DNA of 63,002 nucleotides, filler included, from Octopus bimaculoides (taxonomy: Eukaryota), in NCBI RefSeq assembly GCF_001194135.2. It is 3 parts of 3 records of this genome, joined end to end, with 100 filler letters (N's around TTAATTAATTAA, not from the genome) between each part and the next. Parts side by side here need not be neighbours in the genome. Positions count along the whole stretch, not along the records: positions 52,182 to 63,002 come from NC_069010.1; 2 more parts are not named here. One strand, given 5' to 3'. Positions 55,300-55,863 of this stretch are shown in pieces (within the stretch, counting starts at the first letter, position 1; the number at the start of each line of letters is the position of its first letter). The position numbers were made by a program, and so were the translations under genes. Under the pieces are notes generated by a model. That model worked only from the letters and a program-made list of their open reading frames with translations, was not told where the DNA came from and made no database searches.

Positions 55300-55863
55300 A
55301 AATGTAGGTAACCCAGTCAAAAGTAGGTCACCGTAACACTGCACCAAGTCACCTAGTTACAAGTAGGTCAGGAGGCAATTGCTGAGCTGCCTCCTCTAAA
55401 ATAGGTCAACATGACATTGCTCCAGTTCACCCAGTCTTAAGTAGGTCAGCAAGCCAATTGCTCTGAGCTACCTACACTAAAGCAGGTCACTATGACATTT
55501 CACCCAGTCACAAGTAGGTCAAGAGGCAATTGCTCCAAGTCACCTACTCTAAAGTAGGTCAGCATGACAATTGCACCAGGTCACCCAGTCATAAGTAGGT
55601 CAGCAGGCCACTGCTCTGAACTACTTACATTGAAGCAGGTCACTATGACATTGCACCAAGTCACCCAGTCACAAGTAGGTCAGCATAACAATGCAGTGAA
55701 TCATCTGACATGAAGTAGGTCATAACGACATCGTACAAAGTCACCCAGTTAAATGTAGGTCAGAATGACATAGCACCAAGTCTGAAAGTGGTCATTACAA
55801 CACTGCGGCAAGTGACCTAGTGAAATTTAGGTCACTATGACATTGTACTCTAGTCACCCTGTC
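55300..55863. repeat. ~40-bp minisatellite (~14 units) with alternating A/B units and AGGTCA in register
   Basis: AGGTCA starts at 55325, 55365, 55403, 55443, 55484, 55516, 55556, 55597, 55637, 55677, 55717, 55757 and 55829, plus one internal at 55578. Confidence 0.95.

What the first reader, a model, noticed from the sequence alone, without database searches (positions are those of the whole stretch)
55300..55863. Minisatellite that is an array of nuclear-receptor response elements, about 0.8 kb from the CUX exon
Seen: the ~40-bp unit places AGGTCA in register 13 times (14 in total). Eight are exact AAGTAGGTCA, including ATAAGTAGGTCA at 55591 and TTAAGTAGGTCA at 55437. Six units continue as GGTCAnnnTGACA (from 55404, 55485, 55557, 55638, 55758, 55830). 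The AGGTCA stays conserved while the rest of the unit drifts. Knowledge: an AT-rich extension plus TAGGTCA is the monomeric ROR/Rev-erb (HR3/E75) element; GGTCAnnnTGACC is the estrogen-receptor IR3 palindrome, one mismatch away; Octopus ER has been described as a constitutive ERE-binding activator. Inference: a tandem-repeat-built, copy-number-tunable composite enhancer in the intron following a CUX exon.
Basis: partly seen in the sequence, partly recalled or inferred. Interest (0 to 1): 0.72.

Follow-up and report, generated by a model that had tools for sequence, protein, structure and literature searches.

The report
SINE-adjacent minisatellite carrying nuclear-receptor-like motifs
A real 570-base tandem repeat in an octopus CUX gene intron repeats a sequence identical to a known ROR/Rev-erb receptor binding site, but it starts directly after a SINE-like mobile-element head, and nothing here shows that it acts as an enhancer.

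Summary
Positions 55302-55869 hold 15 head-to-tail units of about 40 bp, with 14 AGGTCA (13 in register), 8 exact AAGTAGGTCA and 6 GGTCAnnnTGACA. The exon at 56632-56769 (minus strand) matches the Octopus vulgaris CUX1_N protein at 45 of 46 residues and lies 762 bp from the array. AAGTAGGTCA is an exact ROR/Rev-erb site in the literature.

Three points qualify the reading:
- The array is a higher-order repeat (periods 40/80/153) of two unit types. Much of the "drift" is the difference between those types.
- The AGGTCA core is the least variable block (1 mismatch in 84 cells; scan P about 0.0007). The AAGT extension that makes it a ROR-type site is no better kept than the rest in the nine B-type units.
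- The array abuts a tRNA-like SINE head (exact box A at 55192). A related head lies 0.7 kb away without any array.

No octopus genome, chromatin or binding data could be reached, so genome-wide copy number, orthologous conservation and function are all untested.

The likeliest reading is an ordinary mobile-element-associated minisatellite whose founder unit happened to carry a receptor site. A functional receptor-bound array remains possible, at about 0.2. Interest is low to moderate.

The parts
55147..55193 (.). (GT)n microsatellite directly 5' of the SINE-like head
   Evidence: TRF period 2, 23.5 copies
55192..55286 (+). tRNA-like SINE head. It has box A TGGCTTAGTGG at 55192-55202, a box-B-like GGTTTCAATTCCC at 55236-55248, and a CCTTGAGTAAAGCACTT box
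   Evidence: Box A consensus TRGCNNAGTGG has its only match in the piece here (expected 0.06). Local alignment to a second element at 54395-54500(-) gives z=9.4. It is not called by ARAGORN or the Rfam tRNA model.
55302..55869 (+). Minisatellite of 15 units of 19-45 bp (mode 40). Two unit types, A and B, form an 80-bp and a 153-bp higher-order repeat. A degenerate first unit probably starts near 55287
55321..55722 (+). Span holding the eight exact AAGTAGGTCA (starts 55321, 55361, 55439, 55512, 55552, 55593, 55673, 55713). Eleven units fit AWNTRGGTCA
   Evidence: the literature identity to ROREs is
55403..55843 (+). Span holding the IR3 ERE-like sites AGGTCAnnnTGACAt, in B-type units only. Five are 1 mismatch from AGGTCAnnnTGACCT (55403, 55484, 55637, 55757, 55829) and two are 2 mismatches away (55556, 55717)
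56632..56769 (-). CUX (CUX1_N domain) coding exon with ag acceptor and gt donor. The array lies 762 bp into the intron that follows it
54395..54500 (-). Second, diverged copy of the same kind of tRNA-like head, with no 40-bp array after it
   Evidence: z=9.4; sequence; no unit match outside the array

Best explanation
This is a locally expanded, mobile-element-associated minisatellite. A ~40-bp founder sequence directly 3' of a tRNA-like SINE head was duplicated in tandem, by replication slippage or unequal exchange. It diverged into two unit types and was then re-amplified as 80-bp and 153-bp blocks. The founder unit happened to contain AAGTAGGTCA, so every copy inherited a sequence identical to a monomeric ROR/Rev-erb (HR3/E75-type) site. 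B-type units also inherited a near-palindromic IR3.

The hexamer stays cleanest for two reasons. It is the block shared by both unit types, and central units are kept alike by block duplication and exchange, while the edge units decay.

Shown: the anatomy, the higher-order structure, the contiguity with the SINE-like head, the motif identity and the uneven conservation. Inferred: the slippage origin, near-neutrality, and that any receptor binding is incidental rather than selected.
For: - TRF finds periods 40, 80/81 and 153; the 153-bp copies match at 84%.
- Two unit types alternate, and there are a chimeric unit (55512) and truncated 32-bp units (55480, 55753), as unequal exchange would produce.
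- Edge units are the most degenerate and have lost the hexamer.
- The array starts about 12-25 bp after the end of similarity between the head and a second SINE-like copy, with no spacer. Box A is an exact match at 55192.
- Within B-type units the ROR-specifying extension is as variable as the rest.
- The unit carries related heptamers (AAGTCAC, CAGTCAC). The one out-of-register AGGTCA (55578) sits where other B units read CAAGTCA, so AGGTCA is one change from a sub-repeat of the unit.
- The piece is dense in SINE-like and simple repeats. Octopus genomes are reported as 43-66% repeats, with SINEs at 11.6% in O. vulgaris (PMC13282606).
- About 23% of human minisatellites/satellites derive from transposable elements (PMC3389668), and SINE-derived satellites are known (PMC10702118).
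Against: - The AGGTCA core is significantly less variable than the rest: 1/84 cells, scan P=0.0007, and 1/40 against 28/122 between higher-order copies. Pure neutral drift does not predict this.
- All five A-type units keep a perfect 10-mer while differing at 23% elsewhere.
- No target-site duplication or SINE tail could be found, so the array is not proven to be part of the SINE insertion.
- Similarity between the unit profile and the sequence just upstream is only marginal (E=0.28).
- tRNA models do not recognise the head.
Confidence: 0.5

Rival explanations
1. This is a functional nuclear-receptor-bound regulatory array. The repeated RORE-type sites, together with the IR3 sites, recruit HR3/ROR, E75/Rev-erb or ER and modulate CUX transcription. 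Dosage would be set by unit number, and selection keeps AGGTCA intact.
For: - The 10-mer is identical to experimentally used ROREs. Eleven of 14 units fit AWNTRGGTCA.
- The hexamer is the most conserved block, and the 10-mer is perfect in all A-type units.
- Molluscs have NR1D and NR1F orthologues.
- The array is intronic and 762 bp from an exon of a developmental transcription-factor gene.
Against: - There are no chromatin, binding, expression or cross-species data.
- With 11-13 redundant sites, selection on any single site should be weak, so uniform conservation fits homogenisation better.
- The AT-rich/AAGT extension that distinguishes ROR/Rev-erb sites from other half-site readers is not conserved in B-type units (8/36 cells vary).
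- None of the IR3 sites is a perfect ERE.
- The array lies in a SINE context.
- Assigning a motif to a factor is ambiguous: the same 10-mer was once reported for Midline/Tbx20 and was not reproduced.
- Given the many transcription-factor motifs, some match in a unit is expected by chance.
Confidence: 0.2
2. The array is the internal variable-number repeat of a composite mobile element (SINE head plus repeat body, comparable in layout to SVA). Such an element would be present at many loci. The conserved core would then reflect the family's source copies or a requirement of retrotransposition, not anything at CUX.
For: - The array is contiguous with a tRNA-like head that has an exact box A.
- A related head lies elsewhere in the same 8 kb.
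- There is no run of 4 or more T between the head and the T13 at 56093-56105. A pol III transcript started at the head could therefore run through the array (inference).
Against: - The related head at 54395-54500 has no array after it, and no other unit copy exists in the piece.
- There is no target-site duplication.
- No other copy was recovered from any searchable collection, although none of them holds cephalopod genomes.
Confidence: 0.2
3. The conserved block is a minisatellite core in the classical sense. It would be a short sequence that promotes or anchors unequal exchange, conversion or slippage, and so keeps itself homogenised while the rest of the unit diverges.
For: - Conserved columns are contiguous rather than scattered.
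- The chimeric and truncated units show that exchange has occurred.
- A second well-kept block (TCACCCAGTC) adjoins the next unit's motif in B-type units, giving a conserved junction of about 20 bp.
- From general knowledge, conserved cores within variable units are a classic minisatellite feature (Jeffreys 1985).
Against: - The visible breakpoints of the chimeric and truncated units lie outside the core.
- No known recombination motif matches it.
- This cannot be tested on a single allele.
Confidence: 0.1

Closest known systems
Transposable-element-derived minisatellites and SINE-derived satellites (PMC3389668; PMC10702118)
   Same: It is a tandem array of tens-of-bp units lying directly against a SINE-like element. 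It has higher-order structure and degenerate edges.
   Different: Homology of the unit to a SINE consensus could not be shown. There is only a marginal match to the adjacent sequence (E=0.28), and no family consensus was available.
Repeat-borne nuclear-receptor sites: Alu DR2 retinoic-acid elements, HNF4alpha sites in Alu, and ERalpha binding in repeats (PMC1785376, PMC3252374, PMC2853111)
   Same: AGGTCA-type half sites are multiplied by repeat amplification rather than arising site by site.
   Different: In those cases multiplication is by transposition across the genome and binding was shown. Here it is tandem duplication at one locus and binding is untested.
Monomeric RORE/RevRE sites (Bmal1 promoter ROREs; synthetic 4xRORE reporters)
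   Same: The (A/T)AAGTAGGTCA sequence is identical.
   Different: The natural Bmal1 ROREs are two sites in a promoter, and the reporters space their sites 14 bp apart. Here there are 8-11 sites at 40-bp spacing in an intron, and the 5' extension varies in many units.
Classical minisatellites with a conserved core (Jeffreys-type VNTRs; the SVA internal VNTR). This comparison is from general knowledge, not tested here
   Same: Units of about 40 bp have a conserved core and variable remainder. For SVA, the layout is also a repeat array joined to SINE-like sequence.
   Different: The core sequence is unrelated. Copy-number polymorphism and mobility are not known here.

Membership tests
Minisatellite / VNTR | Head-to-tail units of 10-100 bp forming an array of about 0.5 kb or more | tested here: met
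   15 units, mode 40 bp, 568 bp; TRF periods 40/80/153
Minisatellite / VNTR | Copy number varies between alleles | not testable with these tools
   Only one allele is available and no octopus reads or assemblies could be reached
Monomeric ROR/Rev-erb (HR3/E75) response element | Sequence fits (W)AWNTRGGTCA | tested here: met
   11 units fit AWNTRGGTCA and 7 fit WAWNTRGGTCA. They are identical to published ROREs.
Monomeric ROR/Rev-erb (HR3/E75) response element | Bound by the receptor and confers receptor-dependent transcription | not testable with these tools
   This needs EMSA or ChIP and reporter assays
Monomeric ROR/Rev-erb (HR3/E75) response element | The 5' extension is constrained together with the half site | tested here: inconclusive
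   It is perfect in the 5 A-type units (0/50). In the 9 B-type units the AAGT columns vary at 8/36 cells, like the rest of the unit.
Estrogen response element (IR3 palindrome) | AGGTCAnnnTGACCT | tested here: not met
   There are 0 perfect sites. Five have 1 mismatch and two have 2 mismatches, all in B-type units and all copies of one ancestral unit.
tRNA-derived SINE | Internal pol III boxes A and B at tRNA-like spacing | tested here: met
   Box A TRGCNNAGTGG is exact at 55192 (expected 0.06). GGTTTCAATTCCC at 55236 is box B with one extra T, 44 bp downstream.
tRNA-derived SINE | Recognisable tRNA cloverleaf | tested here: not met
   ARAGORN finds 0 genes. There is no Rfam tRNA match even at E<=10 on the short stretch.
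tRNA-derived SINE | Dispersed copies | tested here: inconclusive
   One diverged related copy lies in the same piece (z=9.4). Genome-wide count is not obtainable.
tRNA-derived SINE | Target-site duplication and a defined 3' tail | tested here: not met
   Only one shared 8-mer was found, against 0.6 expected by chance
CORE-SINE superfamily | Homology to the ~60-bp CORE domain | tested here: inconclusive
CORE-SINEs are reported in octopus.
Transcriptional enhancer | Open or acetylated chromatin, and activity in a reporter | not testable with these tools
   No functional-genomics data were available

The most novel reading that the evidence does not exclude
A tandem array of 8-11 consensus HR3/E75 (ROR/Rev-erb) sites in a CUX intron is a selected, copy-number-variable enhancer or silencer born from a mobile element. 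It would put an octopus neural-development gene under circadian or hormone-like nuclear-receptor control. That would be a natural counterpart of a multimerised RORE reporter.
Probability: 0.12. Interest if true: 0.6.

Novelty: new member of a known kind. Interest (0 to 1): 0.25.

Why it matters
If the array were bound and active, it would be a clear invertebrate case of a tandem repeat building a multi-site nuclear-receptor element. Its dose could change by slippage, and it sits in a gene important for neuronal differentiation. It would also be easy to test, because the sites match standard RORE probes. As the evidence stands, it mainly illustrates how repeat amplification in a repeat-rich cephalopod genome multiplies a chance transcription-factor motif. 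It also shows that conservation within an array must be judged after allowing for higher-order repeat structure.

Tried and rejected
- **Six-frame protein search.** The head plus array, translated in six frames, was searched against the 5.8-billion-protein collection to find spurious ORFs from other genomic copies. There were 6563 word candidates and none at E<=10.
- **Pattern scans.** AAGTAGGTCA-N-AGGTCA-N-AGGTCA found 6 hits in viral contigs and more than 120 in metagenome contigs. All are unrelated coding or other repeats, and blastn of the array against all 126 loci found nothing.
- **Orthologous locus.** The O. vulgaris gene is on record, but its range of 224 kb is too long for DNA to be returned.
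- **Exact look-up of two window ORFs** near the array found no record.
- **tRNA and RNA-family models.** Rfam and ARAGORN find no tRNA. The many mir-297/466-type hits in the piece are (TG)n/(TA)n low complexity.
- **CORE-SINE homology.** Alignment to a from-memory MIR consensus was not significant.
- **Target-site duplications** were not found.
- **Transposable-element protein remnants.** Pfam scans of nearby ORFs found none.
- **Bacterial-type promoter and terminator scan.** It is irrelevant to this eukaryotic sequence and found nothing.
- **Single-strand fold of the array.** It gives only a modest z of -3.35, and no structure-based role is proposed.
- **Papers not held.** Gilbert & Labuda 1999 and Albertin 2015 could not be read.

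Full report
**What is there.** Window 55302-55869 is a genuine tandem array.
- Tandem Repeats Finder reports overlapping periods of 40, 80/81 and 153 bp over 55306-55763. The 153-bp copies match at 84%.
- Cutting the array 4 nt before each in-register hexamer gives 15 units of 19-45 bp (mode 40).
- The array holds 14 AGGTCA. Thirteen are in register; the one at 55578 is not. Only 2 AGGTCA occur in the rest of the 8.3 kb of real sequence in the piece.
There is no perfect GGTCAnnnTGACC.
- AAGTAGGTCA with up to one mismatch occurs 13 times against 0.71 expected from shuffles.

**Gene context.** On the minus strand, 56632-56769 is an exon with an ag acceptor and a gt donor. Its translation, DPVPCLEHGIVLQQKVQHVENIEIENEELRETLKDYNQDFTEPKLQ, is 45/46 identical to residues 101-146 of an Octopus vulgaris protein annotated with the CUX1_N domain PF25398. 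The array lies 762 bp into the intron that follows this exon and reads antisense to the gene. The source is thus an Octopus species close to, but not identical with, O. vulgaris. The piece has four assembly gaps.

**Internal structure of the array.** The units fall into two types.
- A-type units read AAGTAGGTCA-GCAGGCCATTGCTCTGAGCTACCTACTCTA.
- B-type units read AAGTAGGTCA-CTATGACATTGCACCAAGTCACCCAGTCAA.
- Outside the 10-mer the two consensus sequences agree at about 57% of positions, counted by eye. They are therefore old derivatives of one 40-bp unit.
- The types alternate in the centre, giving the 80-bp period, and a four-unit block is duplicated, giving the 153-bp period.
- Unit 55512 is an A/B chimera, and units 55480 and 55753 are truncated to 32 bp. 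Both are the products expected from unequal exchange.
- The edge units are the most degenerate, and two of the three have lost the hexamer (AGGTAA at 55306, GTGGTCA at 55788).
- The unit contains related heptamers (CAAGTCA, CCAGTCA). The out-of-register AGGTCA at 55578 sits where other B units read CAAGTCA.

**Is the hexamer really better conserved?** Taken naively, yes.
- In 14 full units by 40 columns, AGGTCA has 1 mismatch in 84 cells, the 10-mer 9/140 and the rest 109/402.
- Permuting columns gives P=0.0007 for so clean a 6-column window and P=0.003 for a 10-column window.
- Between the two four-unit higher-order copies the motif differs at 1/40 positions and the rest at 28/122 (P=0.002). 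That count includes an 8-bp deletion and the chimeric segment.

After splitting by unit type the picture is weaker.
- In the nine B-type units the 10-mer (9/90) is not significantly better kept than the rest (46/254, P=0.09).
- In the four central B units there is no difference (P=0.76).
- The AAGT columns, which make the site ROR/Rev-erb-like rather than a generic half site, vary at 8/36 cells.
- The five A-type units keep a perfect 10-mer (0/50 against 34/148, P=2e-5).
- B units also have other near-invariant blocks (GACAT, TCACCCAGTC).

The hexamer core is thus the least variable part of the unit. Much of the "drift" is the fixed A/B difference, and the units are not independent observations. 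My unit boundaries were anchored on the hexamer, which slightly favours it.

**What lies next to it.**
- Directly upstream is a (GT)n run (55147-55193), followed by a tRNA-like SINE head.
- The pol III box A consensus TRGCNNAGTGG matches exactly at 55192. This is its only match in the piece, against 0.06 expected.
- A box-B-like GGTTTCAATTCCC follows at 55236, and then GTGTCCTTGAGTAAAGCACTT.
- The head aligns significantly (z=9.4) to a second element at 54395-54500 on the minus strand. The similarity ends at about 55275.
- That second copy is not followed by any 40-bp array, and a profile of the 80-bp unit finds nothing outside 55254-55869 in the piece.
- The profile's weak match (E=0.28) to 55254-55319 and a degenerate first unit from about 55287 mean the array starts within about 12-25 bp of the head, with no spacer.
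- Tests that failed or were inconclusive: ARAGORN and the Rfam tRNA model do not call either head. No target-site duplication was found.
- CORE-SINEs are reported in octopus, as OR1 or OR2 depending on the paper. SINEs are reported to make up 11.6% of the O. vulgaris genome.

**Motif identity.**
- GGTAAGTAGGTCAT is the unit of a synthetic 4xRORE used for RORgamma-t reporters and pull-downs (PMC6443933).
- The Bmal1 promoter ROREs are AAAGTAGGTTA and AAAGTAGGTCAG (PMC3479213).
- Eleven units fit AWNTRGGTCA and seven fit WAWNTRGGTCA. Five IR3 sites are one mismatch from AGGTCAnnnTGACCT and two are two mismatches away.
- Molluscs have NR1D (E75/Rev-erb) and NR1F (HR3/ROR) orthologues, and the paper on the constitutive Octopus ER exists (PMC4070562).

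Three cautions apply.
- A random 40-bp unit of this base composition carries AWNTRGGTCA with probability 0.0016 and AGGTCA with probability 0.017. With a few hundred transcription-factor motif classes of similar information content (my rough estimate from general knowledge, not computed here), some exact match in a given unit is not unusual.
- GGAAGTAGGTCAAG was once reported as the Midline/Tbx20 site and was then not reproduced in vitro (PMC3485041). The same 10-mer has therefore been assigned to different factors.
- A-type units also contain a CCAAT box and the palindrome GCAATTGC. This shows how easily motifs are found in such units.

**What could not be reached.** No tool gave access to cephalopod genomic DNA beyond this piece.
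- The O. vulgaris locus is on record, but the gene spans 224 kb and no DNA was returned.
- Six-frame protein searching found nothing.
- Pattern scans of viral and metagenome contigs returned only unrelated repeats.
- Exact look-ups of window ORFs found nothing.

Genome-wide copy number, the orthologous locus, polymorphism, chromatin state and binding are therefore all untested.

**Most likely explanation (about 0.5).** This is a locally expanded minisatellite associated with a mobile element.
- A ~40-bp sequence just 3' of a SINE-like head was duplicated by slippage or unequal exchange. It diverged into two types and was re-amplified as 80-bp and 153-bp blocks.
- The founder unit contained AAGTAGGTCA, so all copies inherited a RORE-identical site.
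- Block duplication and exchange keep the central units alike, while the edges decay.
- This accounts for the higher-order structure, the chimeric and truncated units, the edge decay, the SINE contiguity and the unconstrained extension in B units.
- It does not fully account for the very clean hexamer.

Transposable-element-derived minisatellites are common: 23% of human minisatellites/satellites (PMC3389668). SINE-derived satellites are documented (PMC10702118). Repeat-borne nuclear-receptor sites are well known from Alu (PMC1785376, PMC3252374, PMC2853111).

**Rivals.**
- (a) A selected receptor-bound enhancer or silencer (about 0.2). The exact ROREs and the conserved hexamer favour it. Redundancy, the variable extension in B-type units and the complete lack of functional data count against it.
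- (b) The internal variable repeat of a composite mobile element present at many loci (about 0.2). Contiguity with the head favours it, as does the absence of any T4+ terminator before the T13 at 56093. The array-less second head counts against it.
- (c) A minisatellite core that anchors exchange and homogenises itself (about 0.1).

**Verdict.** The enhancer inference is untested and somewhat weakened by the SINE context and the type-specific analysis. This is a new example of a known kind of feature. Interest is 0.25. The most novel reading still open, a selected copy-number-tunable HR3/E75 array controlling CUX, has a probability of about 0.12.

Noticed in passing
window 55945-56105: There is a near-perfect snap-back hairpin about 85 bp downstream of the array. 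Its arms are 55953-56021 and 56024-56092 (69 nt, 83% complementary). As RNA it folds at -94.7 kcal/mol, z=-17. It is followed at once by T13 (56093-56105). It looks like a MITE or a foldback element. Rfam gives only sub-threshold miRNA-like matches.
   Followed up: partly
window 53985-54135 (+) and 56880-57000 (-): These are two copies of another tRNA-like SINE family (GGTTCAGTCCCACTGCAT..CCTTGGGTAAGTGTCTTC), and they align well to each other (score 92). The minus-strand copy sits about 110 bp upstream of the CUX exon's acceptor. It contains one of the only two AGGTCA outside the array (56912, as TGACCTTGGGCAA on its own strand).
   Followed up: partly
window 57627-58023: A 202-bp unit (TCGACTTTGCCTTTCATCCTTTCGGGGTCGATAAATTAAG...) is present twice at 98% identity, each copy ending in (ATT)n. 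A 10-N gap lies at 57819-57828 between them. This is either a very recent tandem duplication of a SINE-like element or an assembly artefact.
   Followed up: no
window 59230-60360 and 62570-63000: These are long compound (TA)n/(TG)n/(ACAT)n microsatellite tracts. They produce dozens of sub-threshold Rfam hits of the mir-297, mir-466 and mir-3149 type, which are low-complexity artefacts and not miRNA genes.
   Followed up: yes
window 55578: The single out-of-register AGGTCA lies in CACCAGGTCACCC, where sister B-type units read CACCAAGTCACCC. The unit's internal (A)AGTCA sub-repeat is one substitution from a receptor half site. TRF also sees an 8-bp sub-period at 55654-55676.
   Followed up: partly
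window 52676-53655, 57819-57828, 58281-58781, 60357-61324: Four runs of N (980, 10, 501 and 968 bases) lie inside the piece. The source is a gapped draft assembly, so the lengths of repeats near the gaps are uncertain. The array itself has no gap.
   Followed up: yes
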